64,000 bases of DNA from assembly GCA_965202585.1 (NCBI GenBank), contig OZ241827.1, positions 30,566,001 through 30,630,000 on the forward strand. The letters run 5' to 3'. A program made the translations under genes and the position numbers. Positions 110-43,100 of this stretch are shown piece after piece (the first letter of the stretch is position 1; every line of letters begins with the position of its first letter). This DNA comes from Thalia democratica. Lineage: Eukaryota. Below the pieces are notes generated by a model. That model did not search any database and was not told the DNA's origin. It saw only the letters and a list, made by a program, of their open reading frames with translations.

Positions 110-3100
110 CTGTTGAAAAAAGAATAAATAAAGTGCGCGGTAGGTTGCATCTGGTGCCCATCAAAAATAGATCCGGCAAAAGTGTCCAACTAAGTTTTTT
201 TAAGTTTGTAGCTGCTAGAGAGCAGAAAAAATCAGACCAGTGAAAAATTAACTGAAGAGAAAACTCACACAGTCCGCAGTTTGGAGCCGTCTCAGGATTC
301 CACGTACCATTCCTTTGGCACGTGAACACGTTTCTTCCGTTTGCGACGTCTTCAGGGTACAAAAGATATTGTTCAGCCTTGCAAGATTTGTAGGTTACAG
401 TTGTGTTGAGCCAGTACTGGTTAGGTGCAACGCTGTACGTAAATTCCACTTCGTAATCTTCTATCTTCGGCGGCGCACCGCATTCTGTTGTTGACAAAGT
501 TGAGTTTTACTGTTTTGTTGTGCTCAAAAAGTGTCAAAACACAACTTTAACAACAAACGTTTAACAAAATAGCGTAGATTTCTAAAAAAAATGTTTCAAC
601 ACAGTTACTGACTTTTCATGCAAATTGCTTTTACACTGTTGTTCCAAGTACCGTCGTTCGAACATTCGTACGCATTGTCAGCTTCCTTGTCGAAGAAAAC
701 GAAATCCGCACTGCAAACAATTTTAACGACTTCCCCACCGGGTCGATGCGTTGGATTATGCAAAAAAACCGCTTCACCATCATCAGGAACATGTAGCTGA
801 GGGCATGCTGTAAACATATATCCGGTTTGAAATTAAAAAAAAATAATGCTTTTTTAAAAGTTCTTAGAAGTTCATAGAAAAAATCTACAACGTTTATCTG
901 CAGGTTTTTGCAAAAAAAAAATACTTTATAGGTAATTTGACTACGAAAATGATTTTGAATAATTCAAATTTTTTACATTCGTTTTTCTCACCACGATAAC
1001 AAGTTCCTACGTCTCCTACCCACTCGCCGTTCTCAACACATTCTCTCTTGTTGTTATCTGCTGGATGAAGAGTATAATCCGTATTACATTTGTAAATAGA
1101 TGTCTGGTTCCAAGCACTATGTTTGGTTAGGGTAGAAAATCCATTATCGAGACTTTGTGTATCAGATGGACAATCTAGAAAGCAAAGTTATTTAGTTTTA
1201 TGTAATTTATTGTTAATTTTTTTTTAAAAGTAATTTTCATGTACTTTTTTTGTAATTATAAGCATTAAAGATTTATAAATATAACAAATGATTTATAAAT
1301 AAATATTTGCCTGCGTCAATTTTTCGGACTTTACCCACAAACGGACGCTTCAGTACTTCGTACTTAAGCCCGTTTGGTTAGATCACAACAGCGGTTTCAC
1401 GCGACTATTCCTGCCTGACGAGTCCTAATAAGGACGAAACCGGTCGTAGGATTGTCTCGGATGCTGTTGTTGTAGATCGTGCGGTGAAGTTCATTGTTTA
1501 TATTCGATGGCGAAAAACATCTCAACTTGTTGACGATGGCCGAAATAAATACTGGCTAAAACTGATCAAAACGAGCGTAGAGAGTAAAATCTCACATTAA
1601 GCTGACAATGTCTAAGACGTTGAGCTGTGAAGATTTGCCTGCGTCAATTTTTCGGACTTTACCCACAAACGGACGCTTCAGTACTTCGTACTTAAGCCCG
1701 TTTGGTTAGATCACAACAGCGGTTTCACGCGACTATTCCTGCCTGACGAGTCCTAATAAGGACGAAACCGGTCGTAGGATTGTCTCGGATGCTGTTGTTG
1801 TAGATCGTGCGGTGAAGTTCATTGTTTATATTCAATGGCGAAAAACATCTCAACTTGTTGACGATGGCCGAAATAAATACTGTCTAAAACTGATCAAAAC
1901 GAGCGTAGAGAGTAAAATCTCACATTAAGCTGACAATGTCTAAGACGTTGAGCTGTGAAGATTTGCCTGCGTCAATTTTTCGGACTTTATCCACAAACGG
2001 ACGCTTCAGTACTTCGTACTTAAGCCCGTTTGGTTAGATCACAACAGCGGTTTCACGCGACTATTCCTGCCTGACGAGTCCTAATAAGGACGAAACCGGT
2101 CGTAGGATTGTCTCGGATGCTGTTGTTGTAGATCGTGCGGTGAAGTTCATTGTTTATAAATATAACAAGAAACTAGAACTATTTCGTACAATAATTTGTT
2201 TTTAAATTAAGGAGTTTAGTAGGTTTTTAATAAAACGAGCGGATAAAATGATGAAAATACTTACAACTTCTATTACAGTTTTAAAGAATCATTTTCAAAC
2301 ATGTTCATTCTAATCTTAACATAATAAAAAGCAATCATAATGTAAGAATTTTTAAAGTCTTCAGTGAAAATATTCATTTATCTAAATGGTATACAAAACT
2401 AGTATTGTACATTTGAACAAAACAACTTGACTTTTTTTTAATACAATATTGCACAAAACGAGCATTATTTGTAAAAAAATGTATATTTTTACAAAATTGG
2501 TTTTTTTTGTATGTTGTTTAAACTTCTTAAAAACTTATATGTTTTATATTTTAAATTGAAAAGTGTTAATAATTATAACTTGTTGATATATTTTTTCAGT
2601 TATTTTAAACTTGATTTTCTCACCACGATAACAAGTTCCTACATCTCCTACCCACTCGCCATTCTCAACACAATCTCTCTTGTTGTTATCTGCTGGATGA
2701 AGAGTAAAATCCGTATTACATTTGTAAATAGATGTCTGGTTCCAAGCACTATGTTTGGTTAGTGAAGAAAATCCATTATCGAGATTTTGTGTATCAGATG
2801 GACAATCTAGAAAGCAAAGTTGTTTATTTTTATGTAATTTATTGTTAATTTTTTTTAAGTAATTTTCATGTACTTTTTTTGTAATTACAAGCATTAAAGA
2901 TTTATAAATATATCAAGAAACTAAAACTATTTCGTACGATAATTTATTTTTAAATCAAGGAGTTTTATAGGTTTTTTATAAAAAAAATCAGATAAAATGA
3001 TGAAAAATCTTACAACTTCTATTACAGTTTTAAAGAATCATTTTCAAACATGTTCATTCTAATCTTAACATAATAAAAAGCAATCATAATGTAAGAATTT

Positions 3101-6100
3101 TTAAAGTCTTCAGTGAAAATATTCATTTTTGTAAATGGTATACAAAACTAGTATTGTACATTTGAACAAAACAACTTGACTTTTTTCTAATACAATATTG
3201 CACAAAACGAGCATTATTTGTAAAAAAATGTATATTTTTACAAAAAGGGTAATTTTTTGTATTTTGTTGAAACTTCTTTAAAACTTATATGTTTTATATT
3301 TTAAATTGAAAAGTGTTAATAATTATAACTTATTGATATATATTTTCAGATATTTCAAAATTGATTTTCTCACCACGATAACAAGTTCCTACGTCTCCTA
3401 CCCACTCGCCGTTCTCAACACATTCTCTCTTGTTGTTATCTGCTGGATGAAGAGTAAAATCCGTATTACATTTGTAAATAGATGTCTGGTTCCAAGCACT
3501 ATGTTTGGTTAGGGTAGAAAATCCATTATCGAGATTTTGTGTATCAGATGGACAATCTAGAAAGCAAAGTTATTTAGTTTTATGTAATTTATTGTTTTTT
3601 TTTTTTAAGTGATTTTCATGTACTTTTTTTGTAATTATAAGCATTAAAGATTTATAAATATATCAAGAAACTAAAACTATTTCGTACAATAATTTATTTT
3701 TAAATCAAGGAGTTTAGTAGGTTTTTTTATAAAACGAGCGGATAAAATGATGAAAAAAGCTTACATCTTCTATTACAGTCTTTTTTTATACAATATTTTT
3801 GAATGTTGTTTAAACTTCTTAAAAACTTATACGTGTTATATTTTAATTTGAAAAGTGTTAATAATAAAAATTTATTCATTTATAACATTAATTTATTTTA
3901 CAACTGATTTTCTCACCAGGATAGCAAGTTCCTACATCTCCTACCCACTCGCCGTTCTCAACACAATCTCTCTTGTTGTTATCTGCTGGATGAAGAGTAA
4001 AATCCGTATTACATTCGTAAATAGATGTCTGGTTCCAAACACTATGTTTAGTTAGTGAAGAAAATCCATTATCGAGATTTTGTTTATCAGATGGACAATC
4101 TAGAAAGTAAAGTTATTCAATTTTTTTCTAATTTTTTGTTGTAGTTATTTTTAGATGTAATGATCATATACTTTTGTTTTAATTATAAGCCTTAAAAAAA
4201 TTAGTACGAGTTAAAAACTAAGTTATTTTTTAAGGTAATTTTTTTAATTGAATAGTTTAGTAAGTTTTTTTTAAGGAAGAAATAAAAAAGTAAAAACATT
4301 TTTTATTAAACATACAAATTCTCATACAGTTTTAAACAACCATTTTCAAACATTTTCATTCTAATCTGAACGTAATAACAAACAATAACAATGTCAGAAT
4401 GTTTTAAATCATCAGTAAAAACATTCATTTTATAAAAATGTAAGCAAAACTAATGTTGTACTTTTGGACAAAAAATGATTTTTTTCCTTTAATACGTTAT
4501 CGCACAAAAGGGCCATTATTTATAAAAAAACATAGTATTTTCACAAAAAAGGTAATCTTTTAGATGCTTTATTTTAAACTTCTTAAAAACTTATTCGTGT
4601 CATATCTAACATTGAAAAGTGTTAATAATGATAAATAATTGATTTATTATTTTCTGATTTTTAACGAAAATATTTTCTGACCACGATAACAAGTTCCTAC
4701 GTCTCCTACCCACTCGCCATTCTCAACACAATCTCTCTTGTTGTTATCTGCTGGATGAAGAGTAAAATCCATATTACATTTGTGGATAGATGTCTGGTTC
4801 CAAGCACTATGTTTGGTTAGTGAAGAAAATCCATTATCGAGATTTTGTGAATCAGATGGACAATCTAGAAAGCAAAGTTGTTTATTTTTAACTAATTTTT
4901 TGTTGTAGTTATTTTTTGATGTGCTTTTAATGATCATGTACTTTTGTTTTAATTATAGGGATTTAAGATTTAGCTATGAGATAAAAGCTAAAATTATTTC
5001 TTAGGCTGTTTGTTTAAATTGAGTAGTTTAAGAATTTTTTGTAAAAGAAGCAGATAAAAATATAAAACGACTTTTTATAGCATTTAATTTCTCCTACAGT
5101 TTTAAACAATAGTTTTCATACATTTCAGTTCTTATCTTTTAATAGAAAACAATAATATTATAAGATTATTTAAAGGCTTCAGTGGAATTTTTTTTTTAAT
5201 GTTAAACAAAACGTATGTTTGTTGTTCTTTTGGTCATAAATAAACTTTTTCTAATACATTTATCGCACAAAACGAGTATTAATCGGAAAAAAAAATTCGC
5301 ATTTTCACAAAACAGGTAATATTTTAAATGCTTGTTTTTAACTTTTTAGAAACTCATACGTGTTTTTATCTATATTATAAATTGTTTATAAATATGATTT
5401 ATTCTTAATTTTTTCAGATTTTTAAAGAAAATATTTTCTCACCGGGATAGCAAGTTCCTACATCTCCTACCCACTCGCCGTTCTCAACACAATCTCTCTT
5501 GTTGTTATCTGCTGGATGAAGAGTAAAATCCGGATTACATTCGTAAATAGATGTCTGGTTCCAAGCACTATGTTTGGTTATAATAGCAAATCCATTATCG
5601 AGATTTTGTTTATCAGATGGACAATCTAGAAAGCAAAATTATTTAGCTTACATTATCATATTATTTAATATATTTTATAGTTTATAACTTTTTTTTTAAT
5701 TATTATATGTATTAATGTAACATATTGTTATATGTATAATTCACTTTTCTTTTAGTTATAAGCATTGAACATTTAAATTCAAATTAAATTTTTTATTTTT
5801 TTTAATAATAAAAAGTCATTAAGTTTGTTAGGTTTTTTATAAAATGAGCGGATAAAAAAATTAAAACATTTTTTATAAAATATACAATTTCTCCTAAAGT
5901 TTTAAATATCATTCTCAAAAGTTTTCATTCTAGTTTTAATGTAATGATAAACCATCATAATGTGTAAAGGCTTCAGTTTCTTCTCAAACATTTTCATTCT
6001 AATTTTAACGTAAATTCAAACAATAATTATGTCAGAATTTTTGAAGTCTGCAGTAAAAATACTATTTATTTAAATAAACAATAAAATTATTTTTGTTTCT

Positions 6101-29537: not shown

Positions 29538-32520
29538 TCCTAATGGAAGGCACAAACTAAAAATGCAAAAAAATTAATTTCGATAAAAATTATCCCTTAT
29601 GTTTTTCAAATTATTCACTTCAAATTTTTGAAAAGTCTTTCCAATACTATTTAGGAAATTCCTATTGTAATAATTTTAATATAAGAAAAAAAAAGTTTTA
29701 TTTGTTTTTAAAATTGTCTTTTTATTTAAGAAAATAAAAATATGATAAAAAATATCTAACTTAATCCACATGTTTAATATTACAGATTTATGATTTGTAA
29801 GTTTTTTTGTTATTCAAATGTCTGAAAAAATAACTTTCAAGTTGACAATTAAGTCAAAACTTGAAATTATTGAAGAGTAAAAATTAAAGTTTTTATTTTT
29901 TGAATTTTTTAGAATTTTAAAGTGCGTAACGTCACGAGTGCGTAAAGATGCGAGAGGTTACTGTAACGATTTACCAGGAAATTTTTTTTGCGGAGATTCC
30001 GAGATTTACCGTAGTTTTTATAATTTACAAAAAAATATATTTAAATCTCTAGACAGAAATTTGCAGTTTAGCTACCTATAATTGATTCCTAATGTTTACT
30101 AGTAGTCAACAAACATAACATATTGTTATAAAAATATTAAGTTAGCTAGTATATACATGTTGTTTTAAAGCTAAAAGATACGTAGATTTCTTCTTGGCGT
30201 TTGTTGACCCCTGCTTTAAAGTGCATATCGATTAAAAGCATTTCAGTAGTAATACTAAAACATTTTCTTTAATACTATCTTTAGTATACACGTATATATA
30301 AGTAAATACTTTTTGCTTTATTCAAAATGAACTTTACAATTAATGAGTACAGCCATAATATATGTAAAAAAAGAAATATTCGTAATACAGTATTGCATTC
30401 ATTGATCTGTTAAGTTAGAATTGTGTAATTATATTTTTAATTTGTTTATAAAATATTTAATAAATTTTTAGTATAAAAGGATAGAGAACCTTTTTTATAA
30501 TGCTTTTTTAACATAATTAAAAACTTCATTCAATACTTTTATAACTAACCAATATGCTTGCATTAGACTTGCTAAATTTACTTTTAAATACGATTTTTTC
30601 AAACTAATACTTTCTTTAATATAAAAGCTCATTATTAAAAAATATATTCACTTTAGAACTAACATAATCTATTTAGTTTTAATTATAAATTCTGTTTTAA
30701 CAGGTGTTATTAAGTTTAATAGCTCTGAACAAGACGTTTAAAGGTATCCAAGGGGTGTGCAACTCGATAGCCGAAAGGTTTTTTCGTGCACCAGGTCCTA
30801 GAACCAAATATTTTGAGTGTCTTTTTTTTCGTTATATAAACAATATAATATAATATCCAGCTTTCTTTAATTTCCTAAAAACTTTATATACAATTAACCT
30901 TAGTTTGTTTGAAAATTTTTTTGAAAACTAGAAAAAATGCTTTATTTATATAAGTCCCTACTGTATACTTTTCTATCTAATAAGTTCATTATATCAGACA
31001 ATTGAAACTTTACCATTGTTATATCTAATTAAAAGTTTATCGTTAATACAAAAATCAACAACATCATTAGAATATTTAATTTAAGTTTATTGAAAAAGTA
31101 CGGAGTTCTGCAACTGGAAAGGATGAAAAATGTTAATTTAACATTGTGTCCTGTGCTTTTCTGTTTGTAAGAATATTTTTTATTGCCTTTAATATAAAAT
31201 AACCTTTAAGCTTTTATTACAGTGAGTAGCTAATTTCTGACACACTTTTCAAAACAAAGTCCCTAAAATTTTTTTAATGTAAAACGATTTTATAGATTTA
31301 TAAACAATATACTTTAAAATAAACTGTCATATAATATGCATACAAATGATAAAGCTGTTTAAGTTAATTATGCTTATCAAATCAATGAGCTTACTTTCAA
31401 AATCTATTGCTTTTCTTTTTGTTTTTTATAAGTTTTTTCATTTGTATTTTTTAACTGGTTACTACTAATTTTTCTAATCAATGCTTAACTACAAAACTGT
31501 ATTCCTTATTATTTATAGTCTTTGACAAAAAACAAAACAACAAATTTAAACACCGTTAATCAAAAAACTTCAGTAGTAAAATCTAATAAGATTAGTATTA
31601 TGAACTAGTTTTAACAAAAATTTTATTTATTTAAGCTCTTGAAAAATAATTTGTCATAGATATTTTGGCTGAAAAGTTTGCGTTTTTATACAAAAAATTT
31701 TACCTATTGAAGTGTTTGTATTTTTTTGATTGTTCAAGAAAGTTTTTTTTATAATTAACTGAGGTTCAATTTTTATATGTGTGTTATCTTCTTAATCACT
31801 ATAAATTCTTATATCATTGTACTTATCATTAAGTTCTAAGAAAGTTATTACAAATAAGAAAGGTTAAACAGTACCTTTGTAGAATAAACACGTGTTTGGT
31901 GATCTTGGTAACTTACTTATTAGCTTATTGAACACGATAAAAAATCAACGTTCTAATATTTCGTTTAAAGGACCTGAGGTATAGAAAAACAACCGAGTCA
32001 CACACCTGCTATTTATCTAAAAGTACATGAAAAATTGTAATTTTGCGAAAATAAAATATATAACAAGAAAAAAAACACACAATAAAAATAAACAAAACTT
32101 AATGTGATAATTTACTCGGAACAACTTATCACGAAGATATATATTTAAAAGAATGAATAGTATTTAAGTAGTAGAACATATTTTGCTTATAACAATAACA
32201 TAGACCTATTGACTTGATTTAAATTATTTACAATTTTAAATATATACCTTTAAATTTAAATTAAACGGGATGAACTACGTAAGCAAACAGCAAAAGAAAT
32301 ACACAAAAGTTGTTTACTACAATATTTATCTAATAAAGATAAAATAAAAACAAAACTAGCTAAGGTATTTCCAATTTTAATTTTCACAGTACTTGAGTTA
32401 GTAATTAAACTATTTAACAATTTTTAGTCAATTATTTCAAATAATTACTTTTTAAAATTTATTATTAAAGAACTTTAGCAGTAGTCTAAATATCATTAAA
32501 ACATATTAATTCTTTCAAAA

Positions 32521-32574
32521 ATTTATTTTACAAACTAAGTTTCGGTCAAAGACCTCGTCAGTGCTTAAATAAAT
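32521..32574 (-). ncRNA. Minimal type I hammerhead ribozyme motif, inverted-arm copy
   Basis: Reverse complement of 34860-34913. Confidence 0.75.
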
Positions 32575-33581
32575 CTAAAAAAAGGATATGTGACAGTCAT
32601 GGAAAATAGCATTTAAACAATTAAATTAAAATAAAACCAAATTATTACTGAAAGTTTTTACTTAACAAACTAAACAAATTAAATTTTAATATTAAGACTG
32701 AGTTTTAGTAGAAGTTAGAATTTTTAGCTAAGTTTTAAAATCAATATAACAACAATAATAATAATAATCAAAGCTGTATGTAGCTTTCTTTTTTCTTCTA
32801 GATAATTTAGAGAGTAAACATTGCTTAAGCAAAAGTGTAATTAATGAAGTGAGTTAAAAATTTAATTGAATTTGGTGTAGCTTATTTTAATCGTGACGTA
32901 ATTATTGAAAATTTGAACAATCTTGTGCTTTTAATCGCTATTAAAATTTAAAATCCCGCTCAAATGTTTTATATGAAAGCTTATAGTTAAAATAAATGTT
33001 TACCTAAAACCAAAACAAGTTAAATTATGGTACTAAGTTTGAATTTTTGGCAAAGTTTAAATTCAAGTTAAATTTAAAAATCAAAGTACAACACAAATAA
33101 TAATAGTAAAAAATTCTTGTAGCTTTCTATTTTCTTCTAGTAGATTTTCAAAGTAAACATTGCTTAAATAAGAATAAGGTTAATATTAATAAGTGGGCTT
33201 AAGTTAAGATGCATTTTAATCAAGCTAAGTTTTATTGTGACTTGAATATTGTAAATTTAAGTAATTTTGTGCTTGTAATAGTAACGAAAATTTGAAAATT
33301 TTGCTTAAATAATTTAGAAAAAAAACTTTTAACTTTAAGAAAATTACAGTTACAAAAATTAAAAAGCATGCACAAAACCTGTATTACGAGTAATTTAAGT
33401 TTTGAAGTGGAGTTTTCGGAAGTGCGGGCAGGAATAAAAGAGTTCGTACCGTTTGTTTAGATTATCACTTCTGTCTGCTTTAGCGATCGCGACCTTTTCT
33501 AATATGCAAGTACTGCAAATGCTTTGTGGGTTTAAATACTTAAAATTGAATTATTAAATTAATTAAAATAAAATAAATAAA

Positions 33582-34034
33582 TACTTAAAAACAAGAAACG
33601 AAGATCCAAACGAAACACTTTGCAACTGCCGAACAAAAAACAAATGCCCCCTTAAGAATAAATGCTTAGTTGAAAATGTGGTATGTAAAGCGACAATCAA
33701 ATCGGAAAACGAAACAAAAAACTATTTGGGCTCAACGGGTGGAACTTTTAAAAAAAGATGGTACAACCATATTAGTGACTTTAAAAACTATAAAGAGAAC
33801 GGAACAGAAATATCGAAGTATATATGGAAGCTTAAAAATAAGAACATTGAATACAAAATAGATTGGGAAATTATCCACCATATTGGCAAAGCAAAAAACC
33901 CACAAAACATTTGCAGTACTTGCATATTAGAAAAGGTCGCGATCGCTAAAGCACACAGAAGGGATAATCTTAACAAACGGTACGAACTCTTTTATTCCTG
34001 CCCGCACTTCCGAAAACTCCACTTCAAAACTTAA
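33582..34034 (+). pseudogene. C-terminal GIY-YIG endonuclease domain of a Penelope-like element (no RT, no real start codon)
   Basis: Frame reads ...CNCRTKNKCPLKNKCLVENVVCKATIK...NYLGSTGGTFKKRWYNHISDF...EISKYIWKLK...W.II...C.TCILEK...LNKRYE...CPH, typical of PLE endonucleases. Confidence 0.85.
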
Positions 34035-34859
34035 ATTACTCGTAATACAGGTTTTGTGCATGCTTTTTAATTTTTGTAACTGTAATTTTCTTAAAGTTAA
34101 AAGTTTTTTTTCTAAATTATTCAAGCAAAATTTTCAAATTTTCGTTACTATTACAAGCACAAAATTACTTAAATTTACAATATTCAAGTCACAATAAAAT
34201 TTAGCTTGATTAAAATGCATCTTAACTTAAGCCCACTTATTACTATTAACCTTATTCTTATTTAAGCAATGTTTACTTTGAAAATCTACTAGAAGAAAAT
34301 AGAAAGCTACGAAAAATTTTTTTTTTTACTATTTTTATTTGTGTTGTTCTTTGATTTTTAAATTTAACTAGAATTTAAACTTTGCCAAAAATTCAAACTT
34401 AGTACCATAATTTAACTTGTTTTGTTTTTAGGTAAAAATTTATTTAACTATAAGCTTTCATATAAAACATTTGAGCGGGATTTTAAATTTTAATAGCGAT
34501 TAAAAGCACAAGATTGTTCAAATTTTCAATAATTACGTCACGATTAAAATAAGCTACACCAAATTCAATTAAATTTTTAACTTACTTCATTAATTACACT
34601 TATGCTTAAGCAATGTTTACTCTCTAAATTATCTAGAAGAAAAAAGAAAGCTACATACAGCTTTGATTATTATTATTATTGTTGTTATATTGATTTTAAA
34701 ACTTAGCTAAAAATTCTAACTTCTACTAAAACTCAGTCTTAATATTAAAATTTGATTTGTTTAGTTTGTTAAGTAAAAACTTTCAGTAATAATTTGGTTT
34801 TATTTTAATTTAATTGTTTAAATGCTATTTTCCATGACTGTCACATATCCTTTTTTAAG

Positions 34860-34913
34860 ATTTATTTAAGCACTGACGAGGTCTTTGACCGAAACTTAGT
34901 TTGTAAAATAAAT
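34860..34913 (+). ncRNA. Minimal type I hammerhead ribozyme motif (PLE-type), predicted GUU cleavage after 34901
   Basis: CUGACGA, GGUC-UUU-GACC, GAAA, near-palindromic AAACUUAGUUU, stem I AUUUAUUU..GCA/UGU.AAAUAAAU. Confidence 0.75.
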
Positions 34914-35029
34914 TTTTGAAAGAATAAATATATTACTTCTCCTCCAGCATTTGAGAACTCTCTATTTGTTTTCTTAAACCAAAACATATAATATCATTAA
35001 AACATAGTAGTACTTGCTATAGTCTAGAA

Positions 35030-40174: not shown

Positions 40175-43100
40175 CTAAATACAAATGAGTTATTTCGAAA
40201 GAATTAACAAAATATATAATATTTGGTAAAACTGCTAATGCAGGTAGAACACAATGAAGATTTAAAACGCGTTCTAGTATATTAAGTATATAGTCGTCAA
40301 TAAAATGTTTCAAAAATTACTTTAATTATTCGCAAAAATTTGTAATTAAAACTTAATTTACTCGTATGGACAAAAAAAAATAATAATAATCTAAAGTACT
40401 CTTACTTGCTTCTGCTACGTTTTTCCTCAACGCTCCTTGCTCTTTTCTCCTCGCTTCTAGACCTTGATCTTGCTTTGGATTCTGATCTGGATCGACTCCT
40501 GGATCTTGAATCTTTCCTCGAACGAGACCTGCTTCTTGAACGAGATCTGCTTCGTGAATCTTTCCTTGAACGAGATCTGCTTCGTGAATCTTTCCTCGAA
40601 CGAGATCTGCTTCGTGAATCTTTCCTTGAACGAGACCTCGAACGTGATTTGGACCTCGACCTGCGGGCTGATCGTGACCTGTAGAGAAAACATGTATTTG
40701 TATTTGTTGTTAATATTTAGAAGTTTGTTGTTTTGTTTATATTTCATAATTAATACCTGGATCGAGAACGTCCTCTTGAGTGCGATCTTGACCTAGATCT
40801 TCCTCTGGAACGGGACCTCGACCTACTTTTGCTGTAACTTCTGTCAGGAACCAGTTTAATCCTCCTTCCGTTCAATTCAGTGTCGTCCATTTTCTCAATT
40901 GCACGTTTCATATCATCATAAGTGGCAAAATCTACAACTCCTGCGCAAATTTAAAACTTGTTATTAAAAAACCAAGTAAAATGAGTTTTTTTTTTTGTTA
41001 AAAGTTTTTGTCAGATCTTATTAATATTACTTTTGTTTTAAAAGATTTAACATATCACATTAATTATAAGTACAAATTGTGTATAAATAGTTTCATTAAC
41101 TTTAAGAGGCATAATTGTTTTTTTTTCTTATTGATAAATCTTATTGAAATGAAATTATGTTAAAACTCTAAAATAAGTACTTACCTACTTCATCAACAGT
41201 TGAGTTTTTTTTTGGTATATTAGGTTAAAGTAATTTGTTAATATATTTGTTAACCTAATATCAGCTATATAGTTATTAGTCTTAACTAAAAATAAGCAAC
41301 ATTGTTATGTGCAGTTTAGTATTTTATTTAACTTGAAGAGGTCACAATTGTTTGTCACCAAACCCGTTTGTGAATAAAATATTTAATTTGCACATCTTTA
41401 TTTACCTCATATCAGCTTAAATTTTTTTTTATATATTATTGTATACCTTCATTCTGACGATGTTTGTGCGCGTCAGCATAGCTAACTTCGCCTGCTTCTC
41501 TTAAATAATCTTTCAAGTCTTGCCAGCTGACACGCGACGACAGATTTTCAACAATGACACGGTATTTTGTGCGTACTGGAGGTCCGTACCTTTAAAATAA
41601 ATTTTCCATTTGCAAACTAGTTAAATTACTTTTCTTTTGTTATCAGAATCCGTGAAAAATTTATAAATGTAATATGTTTGATCTATTGCAACCATACAAT
41701 TCTAAAAAATCAATGGCTATCTCTTTTTACTAGCTATTTTTTTATCGACAAGATCTTTTGATAAAAAAATCTTAATACTTTTATGTTCTGGTAATTTAAC
41801 CGTAAAGGAGGTCAAACTATTAGTTAGGTGTAATATTTTACACTATTTTTTTTAATAATGTTTACAGCGTGATTAACTTTTAAATACATCGTATTTTTAA
41901 AAGTAAGCTTAAAAACTAATGACATTTACAATTTCATCACTAATCTTGTTAAAAAGTTAAAACTTCAGTACAATAAATAAAATGCTAACTTTCCTATCGC
42001 TCTGGAATCATAATAATTAGTCCTTCGACCGCCTCCATAACCGCCCCTGTCATATCCTCTATCACGGTATGAATCTCTGAGTAATTAATATTTGTAAACA
42101 ATACAACTACTTTATTAAAAGCATTTGAAGACAAAGACAAAATAGATCAGTTTTTTCTGTTTATTTTTAATATTATCATTCGTTTTATATAATGTATAGA
42201 GTCATGTGCTTATTTATATAATTATAAGTCAAACTAATAAATATTAACTTCAATAATATGGAATGTATTTATTCTTTCAAGAATTTATTTTACAAACTAA
42301 GTTTCGGTCGAAGACCTCGTCAGTGCTTAAATAAATCTTATTCAAATATAATAGTTGAGATCTCTTTATTTATTTTCTTAAAACCAAAACATATAATAAT
42401 ATAGGATGTAATACTTTACCACAAAAAAAAAGAAAAAAATAAACTACTATTCAAGTTACAACAAAATTTTAAAATATATAAGTTACAATTTACATAATTT
42501 TATGGTTATTTACGAATATTATTAACATGTTTTTGAGAATTTTTTTCAGATTTTTGAAAGTACAAGTTTTTGGGTCTACTTTTAGTGTAAAATTAAGTTT
42601 AAGGTAAAAAACTGTCTTTATTGTATAACAACATTGGAAAGTTACTGTTAAGCTAATTTTATTGTGTTTTTCAAAAAAATTTAATGATACCAAAAAAATT
42701 ATCTACATGATACATTTTTTGTGGTAGACTAAATTTCATTACTTTACATGTAAAATTTGTTTAAAATATCTGGTTTTTTAGTGATTTTTGTTAAAAATTC
42801 CAAAGTTTTTTATTCTAAATATCTCACATTCCATGTGTTTCCAAGTTTTAGCCTAAATTGTCAAATTATAGGTTATTTTTGCAATTCTCTATTAAGTATA
42901 TATTATTATTATAATTAAGTTACAAGTGTTCAAAGGCATAGGGGAGTTAAAACTTTTTTTTTATTTAGTCTTATTTTTCACTTAATTAATTAAGCTACCA
43001 ACTATCTTTCATCAAATTTATAGTGACTTTTAAGATATAAGCGATCAATGTTAGAACAATCAATAGGTTCTTTATGGGAAGCGCAAAACTAAAAAGACGA

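What the first reader, a model, noticed from the sequence alone, without database searches (positions are those of the whole stretch)
1305..2158. Recent retrozyme-like insertion: tandem 328-bp units, each with an intact hammerhead ribozyme
Seen: 2.6 head-to-tail copies differing at ~3 bases, GC-richer than the host, each with a full HHR core and GUC site. The array is flanked by a 16-bp target duplication (1272-1287, 2153-2168) plus a 17-bp filler that partly recopies the target. The neighbouring duplicated introns supply the empty site. Established: metazoan non-LTR retrozymes are non-coding tandem repeats of a few hundred bp with minimal type I HHRs, which yield monomeric linear or circular RNAs and are thought to be mobilised by other retroelements such as PLEs. 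Inference: a young, possibly active and possibly undescribed family, integrated by target-primed reverse transcription of a multimeric or circular template. The non-integer copy number fits rolling reverse transcription.
Basis: partly seen in the sequence, partly recalled or inferred. Interest (0 to 1): 0.9.

Follow-up and report, generated by a model that had tools for sequence, protein, structure and literature searches.

The report
Young hammerhead retrozyme insertion, Penelope-style
A 2.6-copy tandem array of a 328-bp non-coding repeat, each copy carrying an intact self-cleaving hammerhead ribozyme, recently inserted into an intron; it is a typical member of a known class (animal non-LTR retrozymes), and its relatives in this genome carry the insertion marks of Penelope-like retroelements.

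Summary
There are 2.6 head-to-tail units of 328 bp at 1305-2158, and they differ at 3 bases. Each unit carries a full minimal type I hammerhead, with cleavage predicted after 1445, 1773 and 2101. A perfect 16-bp target duplication flanks the array, a 17-bp filler recopies 12 nt of the target, and two paralogous introns show the uninterrupted empty site.

The retrozyme reading is supported but not new in kind. The assembly holds 1,516 exact copies of the family's 31-nt ribozyme core. Sampled copies end at only two unit positions, about 198 and about 255, which lie 57 and 114 nt past the cleavage site. Their 5' ends vary. Most are head-to-head inverted pairs, and in 24 of 25 pairs one arm ends at 198 and the other at 255. 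TSDs are 8-18 bp in AT-rich DNA.

The genome's own RT/GIY-YIG Penelope-like elements show the same signature: inverted arms, a tail at one end and 10-12-bp TSDs. This matches published PLE biochemistry. The 0.6 copy therefore reflects internal initiation at the 198 site, not random termination.

All three units share a haplotype found nowhere else in the assembly, which fits copying from one template unit. RNA evidence is inconclusive and no sequence-related autonomous partner was found.

Verdict: new member of a known kind, moderate interest.

The parts
1272..1287 (.). Left copy of the 16-bp target-site duplication (TTTATAAATATAACAA).
   Evidence: Read directly. Identical to 2153-2168. Present once in the paralogous empty sites.
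1288..1304 (.). 17-bp filler at the 5' junction. Positions 1290-1301 recopy the 12-mer GATTTATAAATA of the target (1270-1281).
   Evidence: Read directly. Absent from the paralogous empty sites.
1305..1632 (+). Retrozyme unit 1 (328 bp, non-coding).
   Evidence: TRF. No ORF longer than 42 aa. 89-99% identical copies lie on many chromosomes.
1633..1960 (+). Retrozyme unit 2 (328 bp). It differs from unit 1 at 1834 and 1883.
1961..2158 (+). Partial unit 3 (unit positions 1-198). It ends at the family's proximal 3' terminus (...GTTTATA). Its last 6 nt (2153-2158) are shared with the TSD as microhomology.
   Evidence: In one search, 42 contigs in run X1 and 49 in X3 leave the unit at 1501 and run into unlike AT-rich sequence.
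2153..2168 (.). Right copy of the 16-bp target-site duplication.
   Evidence: alignment A1.
1397..1468 (+). Hammerhead ribozyme 1, minimal type I. Helix I is 1409-1414 with 1446-1451. The core CUGACGA is 1415-1421. Helix II is GUCC/GGAC. Helix III is the palindrome ACCGGU. Cleavage is predicted after C1445.
   Evidence: Rfam RF02275, 36 bits, E 3.5e-7. Cofolding of two motifs predicts a 6-bp intermolecular ACCGGU helix, -46.5 against 2 x -21.2 kcal/mol.
1725..1796 (+). Hammerhead ribozyme 2. Cleavage predicted after C1773.
2053..2124 (+). Hammerhead ribozyme 3. Cleavage predicted after C2101.
2891..2924 (+). Paralogous empty site 1, in the next ~750-bp exon-intron repeat of the host gene.
3641..3674 (+). 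Paralogous empty site 2.
897..1187 (-). Stop-free stretch holding the Sushi/CCP exon on one side of the host intron. The host gene is on the minus strand, so the ribozymes are antisense to it.
   Evidence: 32 Sushi-pattern exons on the minus strand in 1-24 kb; the paralogous exon 2544-2894 hits Pfam Sushi at E 0.0013, just under the cut-off.
2547..2912 (-). Stop-free stretch holding the Sushi/CCP exon on the other side of the host intron.

Best explanation
The array is a recent insertion of a non-autonomous, non-coding hammerhead retroelement, an animal non-LTR retrozyme. It was most likely integrated by the RT/GIY-YIG machinery of a Penelope-like element (PLE) through target-primed reverse transcription.

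Inferred sequence of events:
1. The PLE endonuclease nicked an AT-rich intron site.
2. The bottom-strand 3' end, ...TATAAA, sat on the UUUAUA at unit position 193-198. This is the proximal of the family's two internal initiation sites and lies 57 nt downstream of the ribozyme cut site.
3. RT copied about 2.6 unit lengths from a template that repeats one unit. That template was a 328-nt circle or repeated passes over a monomer; a homogeneous multimer is less likely.
4. The 5' end was joined by a microhomology-templated filler.
5. A 16-bp stagger was filled in to give the TSD.

The ribozyme's helix III cannot close in a single motif, because it would be 2 bp with a 2-nt loop. It is expected to cut only as a double hammerhead in multimeric RNA, releasing 328-nt monomers that can be ligated into circles.

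Shown here: the anatomy, the TSD, the empty site, the family, the two termini, the inverted arms, and the same signature in the genome's PLEs. Inferred: the RNA intermediate, its topology, ribozyme activity, and which PLE supplied the enzyme.
For: Anatomy, TSD, filler and empty site.

Family size and spread:
- At least 174 scored matches on at least 9 chromosomes.
- 1,516 exact 31-nt HHR cores, 755 on + and 761 on -.

Termini and arms:
- Outer ends cluster at unit positions 191-200 or 249-261, while inner 5' ends vary.
- Of 25 independent head-to-head insertions, 24 pair one short end with one long end. My arithmetic gives P about 8e-7 if the ends were chosen independently at 50:50.
- Among the first 100 HHR hits there are 15 close (-,+) pairs and no (+,-) pairs.
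- TSDs of 11-18 bp with junction microhomology occur at 10 other loci.

PLEs in the same genome:
- 144 GIY-YIG matches; open reading frames around the matches reach 964 aa, and RVT_1 plus a C-terminal GIY-YIG was confirmed by Pfam on three sampled ORFs.
- Three sampled insertions have 99-100% inverted arms and a ~67-nt tail at one outer end only; two of them show clear 10-12-bp TSDs.

Literature:
- PLE insertions are 5'-truncated partial tandems with an adjacent inverted copy and a tail at one end (PMC8557442).
- A purified PLE protein cuts AT-rich DNA on both strands, extends both, and starts RT at two internal RNA sites; the interval between them is the tail (PMC11167929).
- Retrozymes are proposed to be non-autonomous PLE derivatives (PMC7229834; 10.64898/2026.07.22.740005).

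Other support:
- The monomer RNA 1446-1773 folds to -108.8 kcal/mol, z -5.9.
- All three units share T at unit 69 and C at unit 115, a combination found nowhere else in the assembly.
Against: - No autonomous PLE with sequence similarity to the unit was found in 24 sampled PLE loci.
- Those loci have no Rfam-detectable hammerhead.
- The window copy has neither an inverted arm nor a tail, so its own link to PLEs rests on its 3' terminus, TSD, AT-rich target and family membership.
- RNA-library contigs cannot be told apart from DNA carry-over. The flanks have zero depth, but the DNA-run unit-to-flank ratio would predict that anyway, and some RNA-run contigs run into genomic flanks.
- The three unit-specific differences mean the units are not identical, as a fresh rolling-circle copy would be. 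They need later mutation or RT error.
Confidence: 0.8

Rival explanations
1. The array is not a separate non-coding family. It is a heavily 5'-truncated partial-tandem piece (pseudo-LTR) of an autonomous Penelope-like element whose coding part lies elsewhere.
For: PLE pLTRs carry type I hammerheads and form partial tandems (PMC8557442, PMC4209133). Xenopus retrozymes are sister to PLE pLTRs (10.64898/2026.07.22.740005). The insertion signature is the same as that of PLEs.
Against: Units repeat exactly every 328 bp with no ORF longer than 42 aa. Arrays of up to about 10 units occur without coding sequence. None of 24 PLE loci shares sequence with the unit. No listed HHR hit on C1 lies within 5 kb of a GIY-YIG hit.
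Confidence: 0.08
2. A LINE-type (non-PLE) reverse transcriptase inserted the RNA by classical TPRT, with twin priming producing the inversions.
For: The TSD, variable 5' ends, 5' inversions and microhomology at the 3' junction are also seen with L1-type TPRT (established knowledge).
Against: There is no poly(A) or simple-repeat tail. There are two fixed internal start sites, and the short/long pairing is almost obligatory. That is the PLE 'tail' signature (PMC11167929, PMC8557442) and is reproduced by this genome's own PLEs.
Confidence: 0.06
3. A DNA-level event produced the array: capture of an extrachromosomal circular or linear fragment of a satellite array at a staggered break, or local amplification after insertion of a single unit.
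For: Filler DNA and microhomology are typical of end-joining repair. Tandem arrays readily give rise to circular DNA (established knowledge).
Against: Random breakage of array DNA would not give two fixed outer termini across dozens of loci. It would also not give exclusively head-to-head inverted arms with discordant ends. The TSD flanks the whole array.
Confidence: 0.05

Closest known systems
Metazoan non-LTR retrozymes (Cervera and de la Pena 2020, PMC7229834)
   Same: Short non-coding tandem repeats (150-450 bp; here 328 bp) with GC below 50%. One type I hammerhead per unit. TSDs longer than 4 bp. A highly self-paired monomer RNA. Co-occurrence with PLEs in the genome.
   Different: The unit and ribozyme sequences are specific to this genome; no text match to the HHR core was found in the paper library. 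Helix III is the minimal palindromic form, closer to PLE, newt and Schistosoma variants than to the canonical loop-loop type. Circular RNA has not been shown here.
Penelope-like elements and their insertion signature (Craig et al. 2021, PMC8557442; Frangieh et al. 2024, PMC11167929)
   Same: AT-rich targets, 5' truncation and partial tandems. An adjacent inverted 5'-truncated copy. An optional tail at one end that corresponds to two internal RT start sites downstream of a hammerhead. The genome's own PLEs show the same features.
   Different: This element has no RT/GIY-YIG ORF. The tail is about 57 nt rather than 30-40 nt. In vitro, the two strands showed no preference between start sites; here the two arms almost always use different sites (24 of 25).
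Hammerhead satellites: newt satellite 2, Schistosoma Sm-alpha, cave-cricket pDo500 (my own knowledge, plus PMC7229834 and PMC8490949)
   Same: Tandem units of about 330 bp with a hammerhead whose short helix III requires a double-hammerhead conformation.
   Different: Here the copies are dispersed, TSD-flanked short arrays, not long satellite blocks. There is no sequence relationship.
Plant LTR retrozymes (PMC4918200)
   Same: Non-autonomous, hammerhead-bounded units thought to propagate through circular RNA.
   Different: The plant elements have type III hammerheads, LTRs, PBS/PPT, 4-bp TSDs and Gypsy partners. None of these is present here.

Membership tests
Metazoan non-LTR retrozyme | Head-to-tail repeats of a 150-450-bp monomer | tested here: met
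   TRF: period 328, 2.6 copies, 99% matches. Longer arrays of the family elsewhere.
Metazoan non-LTR retrozyme | A type I hammerhead with a complete catalytic core in each unit | tested here: met
   Rfam RF02275, 36 bits, E 3.5e-7, three times; this is below the 52-bit gathering score. All core positions were read by eye. The family consensus keeps the core, while single copies carry scattered disabling changes.
Metazoan non-LTR retrozyme | Self-cleavage of the transcript at the GUC site | not testable with these tools
   Thermodynamic support only: cofolding predicts the dimeric ACCGGU helix III.
Metazoan non-LTR retrozyme | No protein-coding capacity, no LTR, no PBS/PPT | tested here: met
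   The longest ORF in the array is 42 aa. There are no terminal repeats other than the unit itself.
Metazoan non-LTR retrozyme | Low GC (below 50%) and TSDs longer than 4 bp | tested here: met
   GC is 0.42-0.44. The TSD here is 16 bp, and 8-18 bp at other loci.
Metazoan non-LTR retrozyme | Expression as linear and circular monomeric RNA | tested here: inconclusive
   Marine metatranscriptome contigs cover the unit. One 636-nt contig carries a head-to-tail joint, 1631 to 1305. DNA carry-over or tandem read-through is not excluded.
Metazoan non-LTR retrozyme | PLEs present in the same genome | tested here: met
   144 GIY-YIG matches. RVT_1 plus a C-terminal GIY-YIG in ORFs of 832-964 aa.
PLE-type TPRT product | Two alternative 3' termini (tail present or absent) at fixed internal positions | tested here: met
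   Family ends lie at unit positions 191-200 or 249-261. The window copy ends at 198.
PLE-type TPRT product | An adjacent inverted 5'-truncated copy | tested here: met
   Met for the family: 25 independent head-to-head insertions, and 15 (-,+) against 0 (+,-) close pairs. Not present in the window copy, which has a 17-bp filler instead.
PLE-type TPRT product | 3'-end sequence shared with an autonomous PLE | tested here: not met
   BLASTN of the unit against 24 PLE loci from three families gave only chance 12-15-nt matches. The sampling is incomplete.
Autonomous Penelope-like element | An ORF with RT and GIY-YIG endonuclease | tested here: not met
   No ORF longer than 42 aa. tblastn of four PLE proteins finds nothing in the window.
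Plant LTR retrozyme | Type III hammerheads in LTRs, with a 4-bp TSD | tested here: not met
   The topology is type I, there are no LTRs, and the TSD is 16 bp.

The most novel reading that the evidence does not exclude
In vivo, the two DNA strands of one PLE-type integration may use the two RNA initiation sites in a coordinated, mutually exclusive way. One arm starts at unit ~198 and the other at ~255 in 24 of 25 inverted insertions. This would fit a dimeric RNP holding one template region with one start site per protomer. In vitro work saw no strand preference. A short, abundant, ORF-less family like this one would be a convenient natural read-out of that step. Separately, the haplotype shared by all three units of the window array would be sequence-level evidence for rolling copying of a single 328-nt circle.
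Probability: 0.3. Interest if true: 0.55.

Novelty: new member of a known kind. Interest (0 to 1): 0.4.

Why it matters
Animal retrozymes are known, but how they move is still argued from co-occurrence and sequence kinship with PLEs. This genome offers three things:

- A very young insertion with an intact TSD, a templated filler and natural empty sites.
- A family with over a thousand ribozyme copies whose sampled insertion ends and inverted arms reproduce the biochemical signature of PLE integration: two internal RT start sites and both strands extended.
- A near-obligatory pairing of the two start sites across the two arms.

Together these support PLE-mediated mobilisation of retrozymes from insertion anatomy alone, and they point to a testable detail of PLE integration. 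For annotation, such arrays should be labelled as PLE-dependent non-autonomous retroelements, not as satellites.

Tried and rejected
- **Rfam at gathering thresholds.** It found nothing in the window. The hammerhead appears only in E-value mode, below the gathering score.
- **Search for the autonomous partner.**
  - BLASTN of the unit against 24 PLE loci gave nothing beyond chance.
  - A regex and Rfam found no canonical hammerhead in those loci.
  - One PLE family (L043/L047) has a hammerhead-like motif 170 nt upstream of its ORF. Helix I is 8 bp and there is an AGUACU palindrome, but helix II is not viable and Rfam does not support it.
- **Covariation in the ribozyme.** The 28 distinct HHR sequences are 97% identical, so they say nothing for or against the helices.
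- **A stem-loop at the tail, as in the Anolis PLE.** The region 1485-1575 folds no better than shuffles, z -0.33.
- **Presence/absence at this locus and expression.** Logan contigs confirm head-to-tail joints and the 198 terminus in two organisms' runs. They do not show a contig bridging 1287-1305 among the rows listed, and the RNA runs are ambiguous.
- **A short inverted arm hidden in the filler.** Rejected by eye: the filler matches the target (12 nt) better than the unit's long end (8 nt).
- **Paper search for the ribozyme sequence.** No hits, which is weak evidence that the family is undescribed.
- **Host species.** It was not identified. Runs holding the repeat are coded organisms and marine plankton metagenomes.
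Full report
**Observation.** The repeat is exactly as described. Tandem Repeats Finder gives 1305-2158, period 328, 2.6 copies, 99% matches and no indels. The units differ at three places: 1990 T against C at 1334/1662, 1834 A against G at 1506, and 1883 T against G at 1555. Array GC is 0.42-0.44, against 0.20-0.30 around it. The longest ORF is 42 aa.

**Ribozyme.** Rfam's default thresholds report nothing in the window. In E-value mode the three units each match Hammerhead_HH9 (RF02275) at 36 bits, E 3.5e-7, below the 52-bit gathering score, at 1397-1468, 1725-1796 and 2053-2124. Reading the sequence:
- Helix I is UCCUGC (1409-1414) with GUAGGA (1446-1451), plus a distal extension.
- The core is CUGACGA.
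- Helix II is GUCC/GGAC with a 6-nt loop, followed by GAAA.
- Helix III is only A-C-(CG)-G-U, that is the palindrome ACCGGU, followed by C17. Cleavage is therefore predicted after 1445, 1773 and 2101.

A 2-nt loop cannot close, so a single motif should be inactive. Cofolding two motifs predicts a 6-bp intermolecular ACCGGU helix, at -46.5 against 2 x -21.2 kcal/mol. This is the double-hammerhead mode known from newt, Schistosoma and PLE minimal variants (established knowledge; PMC7229834). The C at position 7 is private to this array. The family has U there, and position 7 is the free N of CUGANGA. The monomer from cut site to cut site (1446-1773) folds to -108.8 kcal/mol, z -5.9, with its ends brought together by helix I.

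**Insertion site.** The 16-mer TTTATAAATATAACAA flanks the array at 1272-1287 and 2153-2168. Its first six bases also end the last unit (...GTTTATA), which is microhomology at the 3' junction. The 17-bp filler 1288-1304 repeats 12 nt of the target.

The host DNA is a ~750-bp exon-plus-intron repeat. A probe across the reconstructed empty site hits the next two repeats, at 2891-2924 and 3641-3674, with 2 mismatches each and none expected by chance. The alignment shows one uninterrupted target there.

The host gene lies on the minus strand, with at least 32 exons of one Sushi/CCP domain each in the first 24 kb. The ribozymes are therefore antisense to the pre-mRNA. By my reading, the array sits about 110 nt from the inferred acceptor near 1178.

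**Family.** The unit has at least 174 scored matches at 89-100% identity on chromosomes C1, C2 and C4-C10. The 31-nt U7 ribozyme core occurs 1,516 times exactly, 755 on + and 761 on -. Two independent read sets from coded organisms A and B each give more than 4,000 matching contigs, head-to-tail joints (1631/1632 to 1305), and many contigs that leave the unit at 1501 for unlike AT-rich sequence.

**Architecture of other copies.** BLAST maps of 20 distinct loci, plus the coordinates, show a rule.
- Outer ends fall at unit 191-200 (...GTTTATA) or 249-261 (...GGCTAAAA). These are 57 and about 114 nt downstream of the ribozyme cut at unit 141.
- Inner 5' ends are scattered, for example at 13, 27, 45, 74, 82, 118, 140, 166, 202, 260, 281 and 302.
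- Most insertions are two arms joined head to head.
- In 24 of 25 independent cases, one arm ends at the short site and the other at the long site. The exception is C2:57414325-57415388. Under independent 50:50 choice, P is about 8e-7 (my arithmetic).
- Among the first 100 core hits there are 15 close (-,+) pairs and no (+,-) pair.
- TSDs of 11-18 bp with microhomology at both junctions are clear at L003, L006, L010, L011, L012, L018, L021, L026, L030 and L058.

The window copy is the simple form: one arm ending at 198, with a filler where others have the inverted arm.

**Link to Penelope-like elements.** The genome has many canonical PLEs:
- 144 GIY-YIG matches.
- ORFs up to 964 aa in the sampled loci; RVT_1 followed by a C-terminal GIY-YIG was confirmed by Pfam on three of them.
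- Frequent inverted or tandem pairs.

Three sampled PLE insertions (L050, L051, L054) have 99-100% complementary head-to-head arms. One outer end stops at ...TTTATTTATATTTA or a few bases earlier. The other continues for a ~67-nt tail. Two of them, L050 and L054, show clear 10-12-bp TSDs in AT-rich DNA; L051's is shorter and less clear.

This is the published PLE signature: 5' truncation, partial tandems, an adjacent inverted copy, and a tail at one end (PMC8557442). It has a biochemical basis. A purified Anolis PLE protein cuts AT-rich DNA on both strands, extends both, and starts reverse transcription at two internal RNA sites downstream of its hammerhead. The interval between the sites is the tail. 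Ribozyme cleavage was dispensable in vitro (PMC11167929).

The retrozyme family reproduces this pattern without any ORF. This supports the proposal that animal retrozymes are PLE-dependent (PMC7229834; 10.64898/2026.07.22.740005). The '0.6' of the 2.6 copies therefore reflects initiation at the proximal site. It is not arbitrary termination of rolling synthesis.

**Template.** All three units carry T at unit 69 and C at unit 115. The 60-mer with both variants occurs only in this array. One copy on C10 has T69 alone, and two single copies elsewhere have C115 alone. No multi-unit source array with this haplotype is in the assembly. This favours repeated copying of one unit, from a circle or by template jumps on a monomer, over a heterogeneous genomic multimer. 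A missing source locus or later homogenisation is not excluded. The three unit-specific changes, one of them CpG to CpA, need later mutation or RT error.

**What is not shown.**
- No PLE sharing sequence with the unit was found in 24 loci from three families, and none of these has an Rfam-detectable hammerhead.
- RNA evidence is ambiguous. Two marine metatranscriptome runs hold contigs over the unit, including a 636-nt contig with a head-to-tail joint. Their depth profile parallels that of the DNA runs, and some contigs run into genomic flanks.
- Copy number and presence/absence at this locus were not verified.

**Earlier notes of this scan.** Other first-stage notes on this genome mention tandem-plus-inverted hammerhead arrays and outward-facing twin-hammerhead insertions. 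They agree with the architecture I had already measured and were not used as evidence.

**Verdict.** This is a real, well-preserved and recent insertion of a non-LTR retrozyme, a new member of a known kind. Its value lies in the clean junctions and in the family-wide PLE-type signature, including the near-obligatory short/long pairing of the two arms.

Noticed in passing
window 32500-34990, and 42230-42323: A second, unrelated hammerhead family (CUGACGA-GGUC-UUU-GACC-GAAAC-UUA-GUU) has motifs at 32561 (-), 34873 (+) and 42323 (-). The stretch 32500-34934 is a head-to-head inverted insertion with outward-facing ribozymes and arms 93-97% complementary. The right arm carries an extra ~56-nt tail before an ~11-bp TSD (ATATCATTAAA) that also ends the left flank. 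This is the same one-sided-tail signature as in the 328-bp family.
   Followed up: partly
window 1-24000, minus strand: The host is a very large Sushi/CCP-repeat gene with one domain per exon. There are at least 32 such exons. The first ~9 kb is a recent ~750-bp exon-plus-intron tandem amplification whose copies are 70-94% identical.
   Followed up: partly
L004 (G000:C8:63483740-63487067) and L005 (G000:C8:63157874-63161201): Two retrozyme insertions 326 kb apart have identical flanks but differ by one whole unit in the left arm. L012 and L013 on C1 are a similar pair. These are segmental duplications or haplotype duplicates, with a unit-number change after duplication.
   Followed up: no
G000:C1, pairs at 7203438/7203567, 7212582/7212711, 8506129/8506258 and 8849624/8849753: Four separate loci have a (-,+) pair of ribozyme cores spaced exactly 129 nt apart. 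Either a particular fold-back dimer has itself been copied, or the inner junction recurs.
   Followed up: no
L043:3159-3202, repeated at L043:6739-6782, and in L047: A hammerhead-like motif lies 170 nt upstream of a 964-aa PLE ORF. It has an 8-bp helix I, CUGAAGA, GAAA and an AGUACU palindrome, but helix II is not viable and there is no Rfam support.
   Followed up: partly
L054 and L050 (PLE inverted insertions): In two independent PLE insertions, exactly 70 nt separate the perfectly complementary arms, although the central sequences differ. This may reflect a fixed offset in how the two cDNAs are joined.
   Followed up: no
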